A stretch of 63,933 nucleotides of DNA, filler included, from Octopus bimaculoides (taxonomy: Eukaryota): NCBI RefSeq assembly GCF_001194135.2. It is 7 parts of 6 records of this genome, joined end to end, with 100 filler letters (N's around TTAATTAATTAA, not from the genome) between each part and the next. Parts side by side here need not be neighbours in the genome. Positions count along the whole stretch, not along the records: positions 1 to 7,256 come from NC_068984.1; 6 more parts are not named here. The stretch is one strand, 5' to 3'. The translations under genes and the position numbers were made by a program. Below the pieces are notes generated by a model. The model did no database searches. It was not told the DNA's origin and worked only from the letters and a program-made list of their open reading frames with translations. Shown piece by piece: positions 1 to 7,195 of the stretch; positions within the stretch are counted from its first letter, which is position 1, and every line of letters starts with the position of its first letter.

Positions 1-44
1 ATATATATATATATATACATATATATAATATAGCATAATATATA

Positions 45-483
45 ATATGGGTGGCTAATTCGCAATTTCACAACCTAAAGGCAGAAATATATACGTCACT
101 AAAGTGAACAAAGGGCACTAATCAGCACCGGTATTGCTAGAAATAAGAGTCAAAACAACTCAATAGCTGCAGAATCACTATCTTAATGAGCTGACAGGGA
201 GGATAAAACTCCCTACGGTCGCAGATTGATGCTTATCGGTGGCTCTCACCGCGCCATGGGTAAAACTCATCTCGCCTTGTCAGCTTATAAGATTTCCGTT
301 GAAATCATGCGCTGATTTCATAAACGGTAAAAGTGAAAATTATAAATGATATGGGTGGCTATTTCGCAATTTTACAACCTAAAGGCAGAAATATATATAC
401 GTCACTAAAGTGAACAAAAGTCACTAATAAGCACCAATATTCCTAGACATAAGATTATGATTTCAACGGAAAACTTATAAGCT
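45..483. repeat. Partial tandem (304-bp period) with an inverted 27-bp tail
   Basis: 45-148 is repeated at 349-454. 457-483 is the reverse complement of 282-308 with one mismatch. Confidence 0.8.
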
Positions 484-761
484 TATTGTGTGTGTGCGTG
501 TGCGTGCGTGTGCGTGCGTGCGTGTCCGTGTGTGTGTGCGTGTGTGTGTGTGTGTATTACGTATGTAATGACGTTCAATAATGATGTGTGTGTACGGACT
601 ATAATTCATAATAAGCGTAGTTACGTCACCAATTATTGATTATCCGAAACAGCTGTAAAGATAATACTTGATTACATCACATACATGTATACATATGTGA
701 AAGAAAGAGAGAGAGATACAAACATATATGCACACATATATACAGATATATATGCATGTGC

Positions 762-808
<47 letters not shown>

Positions 809-1015
809 TGCACACATATTTATATGTATACGCGCTTACATATCCATACGCATATAAATAGGTGTGTATTTACGTGTGCTTAAAAATACACACATTTAGA
901 CTCACACATACATAGAAACACACCTATGTGAATAGATTTTTCATATTTGTATGTTTTATTGCTTTTGCGAACGTGTATGCTTGTATAACTGTGGTATGCG
1001 TCTGCGTGTGTGCGC

Positions 1016-1506: not shown

Positions 1507-1771
1507 NNNNNNNNNNTATATATATATATATATATATATATACATACGTACATATATACATACATACATACATAGACATATACATATATATGCATATGCA
1601 TATATGTATATTGTGTATATTAAACTCCCTCTCTCTTTCTATATATATATTATATACATGCATGTGCATACGTACGCACATACGTAAGTATGTATGTATG
1701 TAAGTATATTATATATAGTGCGTGTAAATATACACGAATGCTTGCGTGAAGAACGGCTTTTACAAACATAC

Positions 1772-2560: not shown

Positions 2561-3271
2561 ATATATATATATATATGTAGNNNNNNNNNNNNNNNNNNNN
2601 NNNNNNNNNNNNNNNNNNNNNNNNNNNNNNNNNNNNNNNNNNNNNNNNNNNNNNNNNNNNNNNNNNNNNNNNNNNNNNNATATATATATATATATATATA
2701 CTTGATTGTGTATGTATGTATGTATGTATTATGCGTGTGTTTGTGTTTGTGTGTGCGTATTCGTCACTCATCACCGCTTGACAACCAGTGTCCCCGTAAC
2801 TTAGCAAAAGGTAGAATAAGTACCAGGCTTCAGAGAAAAGTAACAAGTCCTGGGGTCGAGTCTCGATTGAAATTCTTCAAGGCGATGCCCCAGCATGGCC
2901 GCAATCTAAATACTGAAACACGTAAAAGATAAAAGAATTAAATGAAATACAGATGACTGTATAATAGTTTAAACGATACAAATTGCCAGGTACATAACTG
3001 GCGACTGCAGGAATTTGGGGTTCCTGCTCGTAAATTAATGCGGATTATAAGAGGTTTCGGACCATCAGTGTCAAGAAGGTCGATTGTTGTACCTACCCAA
3101 CCAGCCTTTCAACTCACTCGTGCACAACTTCTTATACAGGCCAACATAACACAAGCAACCTTTGAAATCCGCCCCACTCTAAACCGGCCCACCAGTGATC
3201 ATCAAACATTTTATGATCGAAGTATTCACTGCTTCACACTTACACACATACTTCGGTAACAGAAACTGCCA

Positions 3272-3509
3272 GGCGGCGAGCTGGCAGAAACGTTAGCACG
3301 CCGGGCGAAATGCTTTAGCGGAATTTCGTCTGACGCTACGTATTGAGTTCAAATTCCGCCGAGGTTGACTTTGCCTTTCATCCTTTCGGAATCGATTAAA
3401 TAAGTACCAGTTACGCACTGGGGTCGATATAATCGACTTAATCCGTTTGTCTGTCCTTGTTTGTCCCCTCTGTGTTTAGCCCCTTGTGAGCAGTAAAGAA
3501 ATAAGAAAC
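3272..3509 (+). mobile_element. tRNA-derived SINE, full length (octopus OK-like family)
   Basis: ggcggcgagctggcagaaacgttagcacg (A box), gagttcaaattcc (B box) and a shared body. Related copies lie at about 42203-42350 (-), 41140-41380 (-), 47815-48220 (-), 35900-36090 (+) and 18680-18850 (-). Confidence 0.85.
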
Positions 3510-3613
3510 TGTCAGGTACATCTAGTAAACTATCTAAAACTAACTGCTCCTGTGTCTCTTTCACATCCAATTTTGTGGTCCTCTGTCAGTCTGCTAGAAA
3601 CAATAAAGCAGCC

Positions 3614-4249
3614 GCAATGTTATCATCAGTCTGAATATGATTAATGCACGTTCGAACTTGGGAACAAGCTACTCACTGTGTTGAGGAGATAACTACTCCG
3701 AAATGCTAGCATCTCACAGTCTAGGTAGATGTCGCTGCGAGCTGAACTAGTTGTGTACAAACCATTATTCAACAAGCGAGATATATTCTCCGTGACAAAA
3801 CGCAGTGAGTAGCTTGTTCCCAGTTCGAACGTGCATTAAGCATATTTGGGCAGATAATAACATTGCAATTTTACTTATCACTGCTTAGCGTTCCCCCTCC
3901 GTAATTTATTTACGGTGAGCCGCCCTATAACGCTATCAGTCATCGTACGGTGATTGGAAAAGCATAAGAGAGGTAATGTCTTAATTCAGCTCGTAGTGTC
4001 GTCTGCCTAGTGTCTGTGACCGATGAGGAGATAACTACTCCGAAATACTAGCATCTCACAGTCTAGGTAGATGTCGCTGCGAGCTGGTCTAGTTGTATAC
4101 ACACCATTATTCAACAAGCGAGATATATTCTCCATGACAAAACGCAGTGAGTAGCTTGTTCCCCAGTTCAAACGTGCATCAAGCATATTCAGATTGATAA
4201 TAACATTGTAGTTTCACTTATCACTGCTTAGCGCTACCCCACTCCGTAA
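3614..4249 (+). mobile_element. Retrozyme-like non-coding element: partial tandem of a 342-nt hammerhead-bounded monomer with an inverted 5' tail
   Basis: Direct repeat 3683-3904 / 4025-4249. Segment 3614-3682 is the reverse complement of about 3799-3866. The hammerhead 3' half is present in both copies. Confidence 0.7.
3987..4086 (+). ncRNA. Type I hammerhead ribozyme motif with extended stem I (U4C core variant)
   Basis: Stem I 5' arm cagctcgtagtgtcgtctgcctag..ctgtga; core CCGATGA (4020-4026); stem II GGAG-ataacta-CTCC; GAAA; stem III ATACTAGCAT; C4055 cleavage site; 3' arm tcacagtctaggtagatgtcgctgcgagctg. Confidence 0.8.
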
Positions 4250-4819
4250 CAAAACAGCCGTCACGTTCACACTGAGTACACAATATCTACTTCCTATCTA
4301 TTCTTCGACGAAGGCATGTAACCTAGTTCGATATCCGGCGGCGTGTTATATGCTTGAGCGAGACACTTTATTTTTATTTCCTGTTGCTCCAGTCCTCTCA
4401 GAAAGCAAAACTAATTTGTAACTGTATTTCACAGGTCCAACCTTGTCGCATTCAATGTCGCGCCGAATCTCTCTGAGAACTACTTAAAGCTACGCGTGTC
4501 TGAGGAGTGCTCAGTCACTTGCACGTTAATTTCGGATCAAGTGGGACACTCATTGTCGTAATCGACTGAGTGCCAGTGAAACTTGTGACAATCTTGATTT
4601 AGAATTTTCACCAGCAGCCGTGTACCGTCTTTTAAATGCTCTCAGAGACACGATTATAAATCCTACTATAACCAAAGATTACATCGGAGAGGCTAATTTG
4701 CATAATATAACGAATTATTTACAGCTAGTTTATTCGTTTATTCTTCTATTTGTTTCAAACTGTGGCTATGCTGGAGTACCGCCTTTATTCAAACAAATCA
4801 ACTCCGGGACTTATTCATT

Positions 4820-5175: not shown

Positions 5176-6449
5176 GTTTAGTAAATTACAGGTATCTTAA
5201 TAGTGTTTTGTTTCAATGCTATATTGTAGCACGGAATATATCTATAGATTTTAGTCATCATTATAAGTAAGACATTGATGTCTTTATACAGAATATCATC
5301 TATGGAATACTCAGCCCGTTGGACGTTGAATTAACGAATAAGTAGCTCAGCTGATCCACCAACTGAACGCTCAACATTGAAATCGAAGGAAGTTCCATCA
5401 TATGCATGTATGTATGTATGTATGTATGTATGCATGCATGTATATATATATATATATATATATACATGGGTATGTAGCTGTATACGTCTGTATGCATTTA
5501 TTTCTATTTATCTATCCCTCNNNNNNNNNNNNNNNNNNNNNNNNNNNNNNNNNNNNNNNNNNNNNNNNNNNNNNNNNNNNNNNNNNNNNNNNNNNNNNNN
5601 NNNNNNNNNNNNNNNNNNNNNNNNNNNNNNNNNNNNNNNNNNNNNNNNNNNNNNNNNNNNNNNNNNNNNNNNNNNNNNNNNNNNNNNNNNNNNNNNNNNN
5701 NNNNNNNNNNNNNNNNNNNNNNNNNNNNNNNNNNNNNNNNNNNNNNNNNNNNNNNNNNNNNNNNNNNNNNNNNNNNNNNNNNNNNNNNNNNNNNNNNNNN
5801 NNNNNNNNNNNNNNNNNNNNNNNNNNNNNNNNNNNNNNNNNNNNNNNNNNNNNNNNNNNNNNNNNNNNNNNNNNNNNNNNNNNNNNNNNNNNNNNNNNNN
5901 NNNNNNNNNNNNNNNNNNNNNNNNNNNNNNNNNNNNNNNNNNNNNNNNNNNNNNNNNNNNNNNNNNNNNNNNNNNNNNNNNNNNNNNNNNNNNNNNNNNN
6001 NNNNNNNNNNNNNNNNNNNNNNNNNNNNNNNNNNNNNNNNNNNNNNNNNNNNNNNNNNNNNNNNNNNNNNNNNNNNNNNNNNNNNNNNNNNNNNNNNNNN
6101 NNNNNNNNNNNNNNNNNNNNNNNNNNNNNNNNNNNNNNNNNNNNNNNNNNNNNNNNNNNNNNNNNNNNNNNNNNNNNNNNNNNNNNNNNNNNNNNNNNNN
6201 NNNNNNNNNNNNNNNNNNNNNNNNNNNNNNNNNNNNNNNNNNNNNNNNNNNNNNNNNNNNNNNNNNNNNNNNNNNNNNNNNNNNNNNNNNNNNNNNNNNN
6301 NNNNNNNNNNNNNNNNNNNNNNNNNNNNNNNNNNNNNNNNNNNNNNNNNNNNNNNNNNNNNNNNNNNNNNNNNNNNNNNNNNNNNNNNNNNNNNNNNNNN
6401 NNNNNNNNNNNTATATGTATATATGTAAGTATGTATATATGTACGTACT

Positions 6450-6484
<35 letters not shown>

Positions 6485-6900
6485 GTATGTATGTATATGT
6501 ATTCACACACACTTGCTTGCGCACATTTATGTAAACATACATACATACATACATACATACAAGCATACATACATACATACCTGTATGTTTATGTTTAGGT
6601 ACATTCTAAACTATTGAATGCCTGCAATGCTGTCAAGTGTGAACAAGTGCAGCATGTGCATTTGATAGTTGCAGATAATATATCAACTGACGAATAACAT
6701 CTAGATTCTCTTACATCGGAATATATGCATTAGTATGGATGCACGAGTATTACCATGTACGTTCCTGTACTGAACATGTGTGTGTATGTGTATGCCTATA
6801 TTGTTTTCCTTTGCTTTGTGTGTATATTGAGTTTTTGTATGTGTGTGCGTTTATATTTGAATGTGTATATTTCTATGATTCTGTGTACGTGTTTAACACC

Positions 6901-6950
<50 letters not shown>

Positions 6951-7107
6951 ATTTGCCAGGTGCAAACAACTTGCAGATTCGGAATATGAAAGCAACCGTC
7001 TACAGAGGAGTACTACCAACTGTTGCAACTTCTGTTTCGATACTACGCATATAAACATTCACATAATTACACACATTACACATAGGAGTACCTACCTATC
7101 TATCTAC

Positions 7108-7195
<88 letters not shown>

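What the first reader, a model, noticed from the sequence alone, without database searches (positions are those of the whole stretch)
3614..4249. Retrozyme-like tandem: 342-nt non-coding monomer bounded by type I hammerhead ribozymes
Seen: a direct repeat in which both copies carry GAGGAG-ataacta-CTCC-GAAA-T(G/A)CTAGCA-TC. Predicted cleavage falls after C3713 and C4055, 342 nt apart. Copy 2 has a stem I of about 30 bp whose deviations are mostly G.U wobbles on the plus strand, and copy 1 has a perfect palindromic stem III (ATGCTAGCAT). The left end is an inverted fragment that truncates hammerhead 1. Known: non-LTR retrozymes are tandem few-hundred-nt units delimited by type I hammerheads that yield circular RNAs, and partial tandems with inverted 5' tails are typical of Penelope-like retrotransposition. 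Inference: this is a genomic copy of a non-autonomous, circRNA-producing retroelement family, possibly mobilised by Penelope RT. I do not know whether it has been described in cephalopods. This copy has a U4C core change and may be inactive.
Basis: partly seen in the sequence, partly recalled or inferred. Interest (0 to 1): 0.88.

Follow-up and report, generated by a model that had tools for sequence, protein, structure and literature searches.

The report
Decayed hammerhead retrozyme copy in octopus-like DNA
This is an old, broken genomic copy of a small non-coding mobile element that carries a self-cleaving hammerhead RNA motif; such elements (retrozymes) are already known in many animals including molluscs, so it is a new example rather than a new kind of thing.

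Summary
Bases 3615-4249 are one insertion: a 68-nt inverted piece, then 1.66 head-to-tail units of a 342-nt non-coding sequence. It is flanked by a candidate 10-bp target-site duplication (9/10 identical).

One complete type I hammerhead lies at 3986-4087, with predicted cleavage after C4055. It matches 12 of 13 conserved core positions. It has a 4-bp helix II with a 7-nt loop, a short palindromic helix III and a 30-bp helix I. The upstream hammerhead lacks C3-A6 and its helix I 5' strand.

Rfam's hammerhead models do not report it. A covariance model built only from four experimentally validated retrozyme hammerheads puts its best hit in the piece exactly there (19.3 bits, E about 4e-4). My own descriptor found no hit in 300 shuffles. 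The plus-strand unit folds far better than shuffles (z = -5.5); the minus strand does not (z = -1.7).

The architecture matches published Penelope-like insertions: partial tandem, inverted 5' piece, a roughly 40-nt tail at one end. This copy cannot release a circle. It has a single complete ribozyme, weakened by U4C and a helix III mismatch.

Family copy number, consensus and circular RNA could not be tested, because no cephalopod genome was on hand.

Verdict: new member of a known kind, of moderate interest.

The parts
3605..3614 (.). Candidate target-site duplication, left copy (AAAGCAGCCG)
   Evidence: It abuts the insertion and is 9/10 identical to 4251-4260. Only 0.28% of random junction pairs in the piece do as well.
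3615..3682 (-). Inverted 5' piece: reverse complement of unit positions 85-152 (3798-3865 / 4141-4208)
   Evidence: (I16), 15, 21: 88-90% identity over 68 nt
3683..3713 (+). Truncated hammerhead 1: G8, A9, helix II, GAAA, palindromic helix III (AUGCUAGCAU) and C17; C3-A6 and the helix I 5' strand are missing
   Evidence: the model R1 gives only 9.9 bits, E 0.22
3714..4055 (+). One full 342-nt unit, from cleavage site to cleavage site; non-coding, 43% G+C
   Evidence: The circular plus-strand fold is -107.3 kcal/mol, z = -5.5; the minus strand has z = -1.7.
3986..4019 (+). Helix I, 5' strand of hammerhead 2 (6 bp next to the core, internal loop at 4011-4013, then 24 more pairs)
4020..4026 (+). 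Core strand C3-A9, CCGAUGA; position 4 (4021) is C instead of U
4027..4041 (+). Helix II (GGAG/CUCC) with 7-nt loop 2 (AUAACUA)
4042..4055 (+). G12 A13 A14, helix III (A15.1-U16.1, U-A, A.C mismatch at 4047/4052, loop CUAG) and C17; predicted cleavage between 4055 and 4056
4056..4087 (+). Helix I, 3' strand of hammerhead 2
   Evidence: 4056-4086 is identical to 3714-3744 in copy 1
4056..4249 (+). Second, partial unit (first 194 nt), ending at the right boundary of the insertion
4209..4249 (+). One-sided 'tail': 41 nt (38 nt in copy 1, 3866-3903) by which the direct end reaches further into the unit than the outer end of the inverted piece
   Evidence: It is compared with the 30-40-bp tail described for PLE insertions (PMC8557442). 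Calling it a tail is an inference.
4251..4260 (.). Candidate target-site duplication, right copy (AAAACAGCCG)

Best explanation
Bases 3615-4249 are a single, old, dead insertion of a non-autonomous, non-coding retroelement of the non-LTR retrozyme kind. It lies in a genome carrying an Octopus-type SINE.

**Inferred life cycle of the source family**
1. Tandem master copies are transcribed on the plus strand.
2. The type I hammerhead, one per 342-nt unit, cuts after C17.
3. [quoted passage not shown] A host tRNA-type ligase then closes a highly paired circle.
4. A Penelope-like reverse transcriptase/GIY-YIG endonuclease copies more than one unit of this RNA into a staggered chromosomal break.

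**What the sequence shows**
- The hammerhead anatomy.
- The strand-specific fold.
- The lack of coding capacity.
- The insertion architecture: inverted 5' piece, then 1.66 direct units, a one-sided tail of about 40 nt, and a candidate 10-bp TSD.

**What is inferred from the published model**
- Cleavage, ligation and circular RNA.
- The identity of the reverse transcriptase.

**This copy.** It has one complete hammerhead, weakened by U4C and by an A.C mismatch in helix III, and one truncated hammerhead. At most it could cut a read-through transcript once, and it cannot release a unit-length RNA. Its parts differ by about 9-12%, so it has been decaying for a long time.
For: - **Repeat and inverted piece:**
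- **Hammerhead by descriptor:** the only hit in the piece, with none in 300 shuffles.
- **Hammerhead by independent model:** a covariance model was built from four experimentally validated retrozyme hammerheads, from coral, mussel and two axolotl families (NAR 2020 Suppl. Table 2). Its best hit in 7256 nt is 4014-4061 on the plus strand, full length, 19.3 bits, E 3.6e-4. The truncated copy ranks third.
- **Same layout as the validated ribozymes:**
  - 6-bp helix I before an internal loop.
  - 4-bp helix II.
  - GAAAY...RUH.
  - A palindromic helix III.
- **Fold:** the 131-nt region has z = -5.2. The circular unit has z = -5.5 on the plus strand against -1.7 on the minus strand, and -0.1 to -2.1 in control windows. 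Helix I has 30 pairs, 5 of them G.U.
- **Non-coding:** no ORF above 59 aa and no Pfam domain in six frames.
- **TSD:** 9/10 identical, p about 0.003.
- **PLE hallmarks as described in PMC8557442:** partial tandem, inverted 5'-truncated piece, 30-40-bp tail at one end.
- **Penelope elements in octopus:** they are present and recently active in Octopus vulgaris (PMC13282606).
- **Retrozyme-PLE link:** retrozymes were shown to be related to PLE pLTRs in Xenopus (bioRxiv 10.64898/2026.07.22.740005).
- **Source genome:** the adjacent SINE ORF is 88% identical to an Octopus bimaculoides protein.
Against: - Rfam's curated hammerhead models report nothing, even on 126 nt at E<=10.
- The core is not canonical (U4C) and the family consensus is unknown.
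- Only one locus was seen. There is no second copy in the piece and none in the metagenome, viral or prokaryote collections. No cephalopod genome could be searched, so 'family' is an assumption.
- Only 1.66 units and one complete ribozyme are present, short of the published definition of a retrozyme, which requires a hammerhead in every unit.
- The TSD is imperfect.
- Differences between the two units are unevenly spread: 1 in 62 nt against 25 in 159 nt, p = 0.002. Simple rolling-circle copying of one circle followed by neutral decay does not predict this.
Confidence: 0.72

Rival explanations
1. It is not a separate non-autonomous family. It is the terminal (pLTR) part of an autonomous Penelope-like element that was extremely 5'-truncated on insertion, so that only the hammerhead-bearing end is present as a partial tandem.
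For: PLE insertions are heavily 5'-truncated, form partial tandems with inverted 5' pieces and tails, and carry hammerheads in their pLTRs. Retrozymes and pLTRs are sequence relatives in Xenopus. Penelope families are active in octopus.
Against: A complete 342-nt unit repeats head to tail with no trace of RT or GIY-YIG coding sequence. PLE hammerheads are described as minimal variants that lack helix III and the loop-loop contacts. This one has helix III, a 7-nt loop 2 and an internal loop in helix I, like retrozyme hammerheads.
Confidence: 0.14
2. It is a hammerhead-bearing short repeat (satellite or SINE-like) inserted by another reverse transcriptase, for example a LINE. The inverted piece would then come from twin priming rather than from Penelope-type integration.
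For: An inverted 5' segment next to a direct 3' segment with a TSD is also the signature of LINE twin priming (established knowledge of L1 integration). LINEs make up 12.9% of the O. vulgaris genome. The retrozyme literature states that no conserved motif identifies the mobilising element.
Against: There is no poly(A) or simple-repeat 3' tail at 4249. The more-than-unit-length tandem copy and the one-sided tail of about 40 nt fit the PLE description better. Retrozymes and PLEs co-occur in 32 of 35 species surveyed.
Confidence: 0.1
3. It is a local tandem duplication plus a foldback rearrangement of unique DNA, and the hammerhead-like motif arose by chance.
For: Only one locus was seen. The core deviates at U4. 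Rfam hammerhead models are silent. The piece is rich in repeats and assembly gaps.
Against: The descriptor gave no hit in 300 shuffles. An independent model gives E about 4e-4, with the hit exactly at the motif. A 30-bp helix I brackets the core, and the excess folding is specific to the plus strand. A candidate TSD bounds the whole structure.
Confidence: 0.04

Closest known systems
Metazoan non-LTR retrozymes (Cervera & de la Pena, NAR 2020, PMC7229834), e.g. the Mytilus galloprovincialis 350-390-nt repeats
   Same: - Head-to-tail non-coding units of a few hundred nt (342 here).
- G+C below 50%.
- One type I hammerhead per unit, with a 6-bp helix I before an internal loop, a 4-bp helix II, GAAAY/RUH and a short palindromic helix III.
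- A highly self-paired predicted unit RNA.
- A TSD longer than 4 bp.

   Different: - No sequence similarity outside the ribozyme core.
- Only 1.66 units and one complete ribozyme.
- U4C in the core.
- An unusually long helix I (30 bp).
- Expression and circularity were not tested.
- No cephalopod example was found in the literature held here.
Penelope-like elements and their pLTR hammerheads (PMC8557442; Cervera & de la Pena 2014)
   Same: Partial tandem, an inverted 5'-truncated piece next to the upstream copy, a 30-40-bp tail at one end, and a type I hammerhead in the repeated terminal part.
   Different: There is no RT or GIY-YIG ORF. PLE hammerheads are minimal variants without helix III or loop contacts, whereas this one is of the canonical style.
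Amphibian satellite 2 / axolotl retrozyme hammerheads and Schistosoma Sm-alpha
   Same: Type I hammerheads in repeats of about 330 nt. Their palindromic helix III/loop 3 can extend into a dimeric helix III. The copy 1 helix III here is a 10-nt perfect palindrome.
   Different: Helix III here has three pairs plus a tetraloop in copy 1. That resembles the invertebrate ribozymes that cleave as monomers, so a dimer is not required.
Viroid and viroid-like hammerhead RNAs (Avsunviroidae, satellite RNAs)
   Same: Unit-length processing by a hammerhead and a compact self-paired circle. A natural U4C core variant with lowered in vitro activity still supports viroid infectivity (PMC3088659).
   Different: This element is DNA-encoded and chromosomally integrated with a TSD. 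It has a hammerhead on one strand only.

Membership tests
Hammerhead ribozyme, type I | Conserved core C3 U4 G5 A6 N7 G8 A9 / G12 A13 A14 / A15.1-U16.1 / H17 | tested here: inconclusive
   12 of 13 positions fit. Position 4 is C (4021). U4C is a known natural variant with reduced activity. The family consensus is unknown.
Hammerhead ribozyme, type I | Three-way junction with helix I open and helices II and III capped by loops | tested here: met
   Helix I is 30 bp and open. Helix II is 4 bp with a 7-nt loop. Helix III is 2-3 bp with the loop CUAG.
Hammerhead ribozyme, type I | Match to the curated Rfam hammerhead covariance models | tested here: not met
   No hammerhead family was reported at E<=10 on 7256, 741 or 126 bases.
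Hammerhead ribozyme, type I | Match to a covariance model built from experimentally validated retrozyme hammerheads, this sequence excluded | tested here: met
   The best hit in the piece is 4014-4061 on the plus strand: 19.3 bits, E 3.6e-4, covering model positions 1-44 of 44.
Hammerhead ribozyme, type I | Self-cleavage at the predicted site | not testable with these tools
   This needs in vitro transcription of this copy and of the family consensus.
Non-LTR retrozyme | Head-to-tail units of about 150-450 bp, each with a type I hammerhead | tested here: inconclusive
   The unit is 342 nt, but there are only 1.66 copies, with one complete and one truncated hammerhead.
Non-LTR retrozyme | No protein-coding capacity; no LTR, PBS or PPT | tested here: met
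   The longest ORF is 59 aa and has no homologue. No Pfam domain was found in six frames.
Non-LTR retrozyme | Low G+C (below 50%) and a highly self-paired unit RNA | tested here: met
   G+C is 43%. The circular plus-strand MFE is -107.3 kcal/mol, z = -5.5, with 65% of bases paired. This is a prediction only.
Non-LTR retrozyme | Multi-copy family dispersed in the host genome | not testable with these tools
   No cephalopod genome collection is on hand. No other copy was found in the piece or in the metagenome, viral or prokaryote collections.
Non-LTR retrozyme | Expression as linear and circular unit-length RNA | not testable with these tools
   This needs RNA-seq or northern blots of octopus tissues.
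Penelope-like element (insertion architecture) | Partial tandem with an inverted 5'-truncated piece next to the upstream copy | tested here: met
   compared with the description in PMC8557442.
Penelope-like element (insertion architecture) | A 30-40-bp tail present at one end only | tested here: inconclusive
   The direct end extends 38-41 nt beyond the outer end of the inverted piece. The size fits, but calling it the PLE tail is an inference from a single locus.
Penelope-like element (autonomous) | ORF with RT and a GIY-YIG endonuclease | tested here: not met
   There is no such domain in or around the insertion, checked over roughly 3520-4360 in six frames. If PLE-related, the element is non-autonomous.

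The most novel reading that the evidence does not exclude
The junctions of this copy may be a direct footprint of Penelope-type integration acting on a hammerhead retrozyme. They comprise an inverted 5' piece, a one-sided tail of about 40 nt and a TSD of about 10 bp.

The two units are nearly identical over the ribozyme but about 16% different elsewhere. That would mean the template was a heterogeneous multimeric transcript, not one monomeric circle copied by rolling-circle reverse transcription. If so, the usual circular-RNA model of retrozyme spread would need changing.
Probability: 0.2. Interest if true: 0.55.

Novelty: new member of a known kind. Interest (0 to 1): 0.38.

Why it matters
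Retrozymes are abundant sources of small circular RNAs in animals. Which enzyme moves them is still argued from co-occurrence and from sequence relatedness in frogs.

A copy whose ends show the peculiar Penelope-type insertion scars would add structural evidence. A genome-wide survey of retrozyme junctions, here in octopus where Penelope elements are recently active, could settle the question of the mobilising enzyme.

It would also extend retrozymes to cephalopods, whose repeat annotations held here do not mention ribozymes. For this locus itself nothing functional is expected, because it is a decayed copy.

Tried and rejected
- **Rfam.** cmscan in E-value mode on the whole piece, on 741 nt and on 126 nt gave no hammerhead family. 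The only outputs were sub-threshold miRNA and snoRNA look-alikes. MIR6140 (54 bits, gathering score 140) merely reflects the 68-bp hairpin made by the inverted piece. The C/D-box snoRNA hits (E 1-8) come from the GAUGA string. All were rejected as identifications.\n- **Exact-pattern scans for the ribozyme or helix I.** Metagenome, viral and prokaryote contig collections gave 0 matches.\n- **Degenerate helix II pattern.** It gave 12 metagenome matches, all G+C-rich, with no CUGA upstream and no helix III, so they are chance hits.\n- **Reaching family copies through spurious ORFs.** The 59-aa ORF across the ribozyme has no homologue. As a control, the SINE ORF found only one UniRef Octopus bimaculoides protein, and that protein is not on record in the contig collection. 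The protein route therefore cannot reach cephalopod DNA, and the missing retrozyme ORFs say nothing about copy number.\n- **MITE or DNA transposon.** Rejected. The inverted repeat is not terminal, because its right arm ends 41 nt inside the element.\n- **tRNA-derived SINE.** No tRNA was found.\n- **Similarity to published retrozymes outside the ribozyme.** None was found.\n- **Hammerhead on the minus strand.** None was found.\n- **TRF.** It does not list the repeat, because there are fewer than two copies.

Full report
**1. The observation**

The stretch was read directly and the repeats were computed.
- 3683-3903 and 4025-4249 are direct copies with a period of 342/343 nt (families D12/D13). 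They have 26 differences over 226 aligned columns.
- 3615-3682 is the reverse complement of 3798-3865 and of 4141-4208, at 88-90% identity over 68 nt (I16).
- Both direct copies carry GAGGAG-ATAACTA-CTCC-GAAA-T(G/A)CTAGCA-TC.
- The inverted piece joins copy 1 at 3682/3683, inside the ribozyme core. Hammerhead 1 therefore lacks C3-A6 and the 5' strand of helix I.

**2. The hammerhead**

In copy 2 the motif reads as follows.
- Helix I 5' strand: 3986-4019.
- Core strand: CCGAUGA at 4020-4026.
- Helix II: GGAG/CUCC with loop AUAACUA, 4027-4041.
- GAAA: 4042-4045.
- Helix III: A-U, U-A, A.C with loop CUAG, 4045-4054.
- C17: 4055.
- Helix I 3' strand: 4056-4087.

Twelve of the thirteen conserved positions fit, and position 4 is C. 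Helix I has 30 pairs (25 Watson-Crick, 5 G.U), one U.U mismatch, and an asymmetric internal loop after the sixth pair.

Four tests were run.
- My own descriptor, relaxed at position 4, hits only 4020-4055 on either strand. It gave no hit in 300 dinucleotide shuffles of the piece.
- The 131-nt region folds with z = -5.2.
- Rfam's hammerhead models report nothing at E<=10, even when only 126 nt are given. This is a real negative and I cannot explain it fully.
- I took the four retrozyme hammerheads whose self-cleavage was shown experimentally: coral, mussel and two axolotl families (Suppl. Table 2 of PMC7229834). I aligned them and built a covariance model without the present sequence. Searched over the whole piece with filters off, its best hit is 4014-4061 on the plus strand: full length, 19.3 bits, E 3.6e-4. 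The calibration is shortened, so the E-value is rough. The truncated hammerhead 1 ranks third at 9.9 bits.

Side by side, all five ribozymes share the same layout:
- a 6-bp helix I before an internal loop;
- a 4-bp helix II;
- GAAAY and RUH;
- a palindromic helix III.

The motif is therefore a canonical-style type I hammerhead. It is not the minimal variant, lacking helix III, that is described for Penelope-like elements.

**3. The unit RNA**

The 342-nt unit (3714-4055) has 43% G+C.
- Folded as a circle, the plus strand gives -107.3 kcal/mol (z = -5.5 against shuffles).
- The minus strand gives -86.6 kcal/mol (z = -1.7).
- Seven control windows from the same piece give z from -0.1 to -2.1.

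The excess structure is therefore specific to the plus strand, the strand that carries the ribozyme. No hammerhead is found on the minus strand.

**4. The insertion**

- The element has no coding signal. The longest ORF is 59 aa and has no homologue. Six-frame translations of the element and its near flanks match no Pfam family.
- The homology to the unit stops at 3615 on the left and 4249 on the right.
- The 10 bases before the left end (AAAGCAGCCG) and the 10 bases starting one base after the right end (AAAACAGCCG) agree at 9 of 10 positions. Only 0.28% of random junction pairs from the piece do as well. I read this as a decayed target-site duplication.
- The direct end reaches 38-41 nt further into the unit than the outer end of the inverted piece.

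Three features match point by point the description of Penelope-like insertions in PMC8557442:
- a partial tandem;
- an inverted 5'-truncated piece next to the upstream copy;
- a 30-40-bp extension at one end only.

The match to that description is an inference from one locus.

**5. Source and context**

- The piece is non-coding, rich in microsatellites, and has three assembly gaps.
- Just upstream (3268-3510) lies a SINE. Its incidental ORF is 88% identical to a UniRef protein of Octopus bimaculoides, so the piece comes from an octopus or a close relative.
- Penelope elements are reported as recently active in Octopus vulgaris, with 30 families and 329 recent insertions (PMC13282606).

**6. 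Relatives elsewhere**

None could be reached.
- Exact patterns from the ribozyme and helix I are absent from the metagenome, viral and prokaryote collections.
- A degenerate pattern gave only chance matches.
- The protein route does not reach cephalopod DNA.

As a result, copy number, family consensus, covariation and expression remain untested.

**7. How it most likely works**

Shown:
- the ribozyme anatomy;
- the strand-specific fold;
- the non-coding unit;
- the insertion scars.

Inferred from the published retrozyme model (PMC7229834, PMC7761336):
1. Master arrays are transcribed.
2. Each hammerhead cuts after C17.
3. The long helix I keeps the two ends of the monomer adjacent, so a host tRNA-type ligase can circularise it.
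4. A Penelope-like RT/endonuclease copies more than one unit into a new site.

This copy is a dead end.
- Only one ribozyme is complete.
- It carries U4C, a change reported to lower activity considerably in vitro, though a viroid with it remains infectious (PMC3088659).
- It also carries an A.C mismatch in helix III.
- Two cuts are needed to release a unit.
- The three versions of the shared 68 nt carry 4, 3 and 3 private changes, and the copies differ by 9-12%. The insertion is therefore old.

**8. Unexplained**

The differences between the two units are unevenly spread. There is 1 in the 62 nt that hold the 3' part of the ribozyme and the helix I 3' strand, against 25 in the next 159 nt (Fisher p = 0.002). 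Copying one circle twice, followed by neutral decay, predicts an even spread. Three explanations remain possible:
- the template was a heterogeneous multimer whose ribozyme part was held by selection in the source array;
- there was gene conversion;
- it is chance.

**9. Comparison and novelty**

In what it works like and in every feature testable here, this is a non-LTR retrozyme copy with Penelope-type insertion scars.
- Membership of the hammerhead class is supported by anatomy and by the independent model, but not by Rfam.
- Membership of the retrozyme class is incomplete on the points that need a genome (a multi-copy family, a hammerhead in every unit) or RNA (circles).
- Non-LTR retrozymes are described in cnidarians, a mussel, rotifers, trematodes, insects, annelids, planarians, crustaceans and amphibians. 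Their derivation from PLE termini was recently argued for Xenopus.
- I found no paper in the held library that reports hammerheads or retrozymes in cephalopods.

It is therefore a new member of a known kind. Its main value is the insertion architecture, which bears on the open question of which enzyme mobilises retrozymes. Interest is 0.38.

Noticed in passing
window 35-483: A second 'partial tandem plus inverted piece'. 35-148 repeats at 339-454 (period about 305, about 90% identity). 457-483 is the reverse complement of 282-308 (26/27). The structure lies against a (TA)n tract at 1-34. Its sequence is unrelated to the hammerhead element, and neither the descriptor nor model R1 finds a hammerhead there. 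A hairpin GGAG-GAUAAAA-CUCC preceded by CUGACAG at about 191-214 faintly resembles the helix II region of the hammerhead. This may be another Penelope-style insertion of a short non-coding unit.
   Followed up: partly
window 3268-3510 (and about 2800-2935): These are octopus-type SINE copies. The incidental ORF 3349-3570 (-) is 88% identical to UniRef A0A0L8H450 of Octopus bimaculoides, which places the piece in an octopus-like genome.
   Followed up: partly
window 3615-3865: In a plus-strand transcript, the inverted piece and its partner (3615-3682 with 3798-3865) would form a hairpin of about 68 bp with a 115-nt loop. Rfam MIR6140 scores 54 bits here, against a gathering score of 140. This is a by-product of the insertion structure and a possible source of double-stranded RNA, not a miRNA gene.
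   Followed up: no
window 3683-3744 versus 3745-3903: The two units diverge unevenly: 1 difference in 62 nt over the ribozyme 3' part and helix I 3' strand, against 25 in 159 nt downstream (p = 0.002).
   Followed up: partly
window 716-930, 1400-2120, 5400-5500, 6410-6600: There are many sub-threshold Rfam 'miRNA' matches (mir-297, mir-466, mir-5014, mir-3149 and others). All sit on (TA)n, (CA)n or (GTAT)n microsatellites and are artefacts of low complexity.
   Followed up: yes
window 1507-1516, 2581-2679, 5521-6411: These are runs of N inside microsatellite-rich DNA, that is, assembly gaps. ORFs listed across them are meaningless.
   Followed up: yes
window 7092-7195: A (CTAT)n tract grades into (CTGT)n, with 26 copies at 95% matches.
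   Followed up: no
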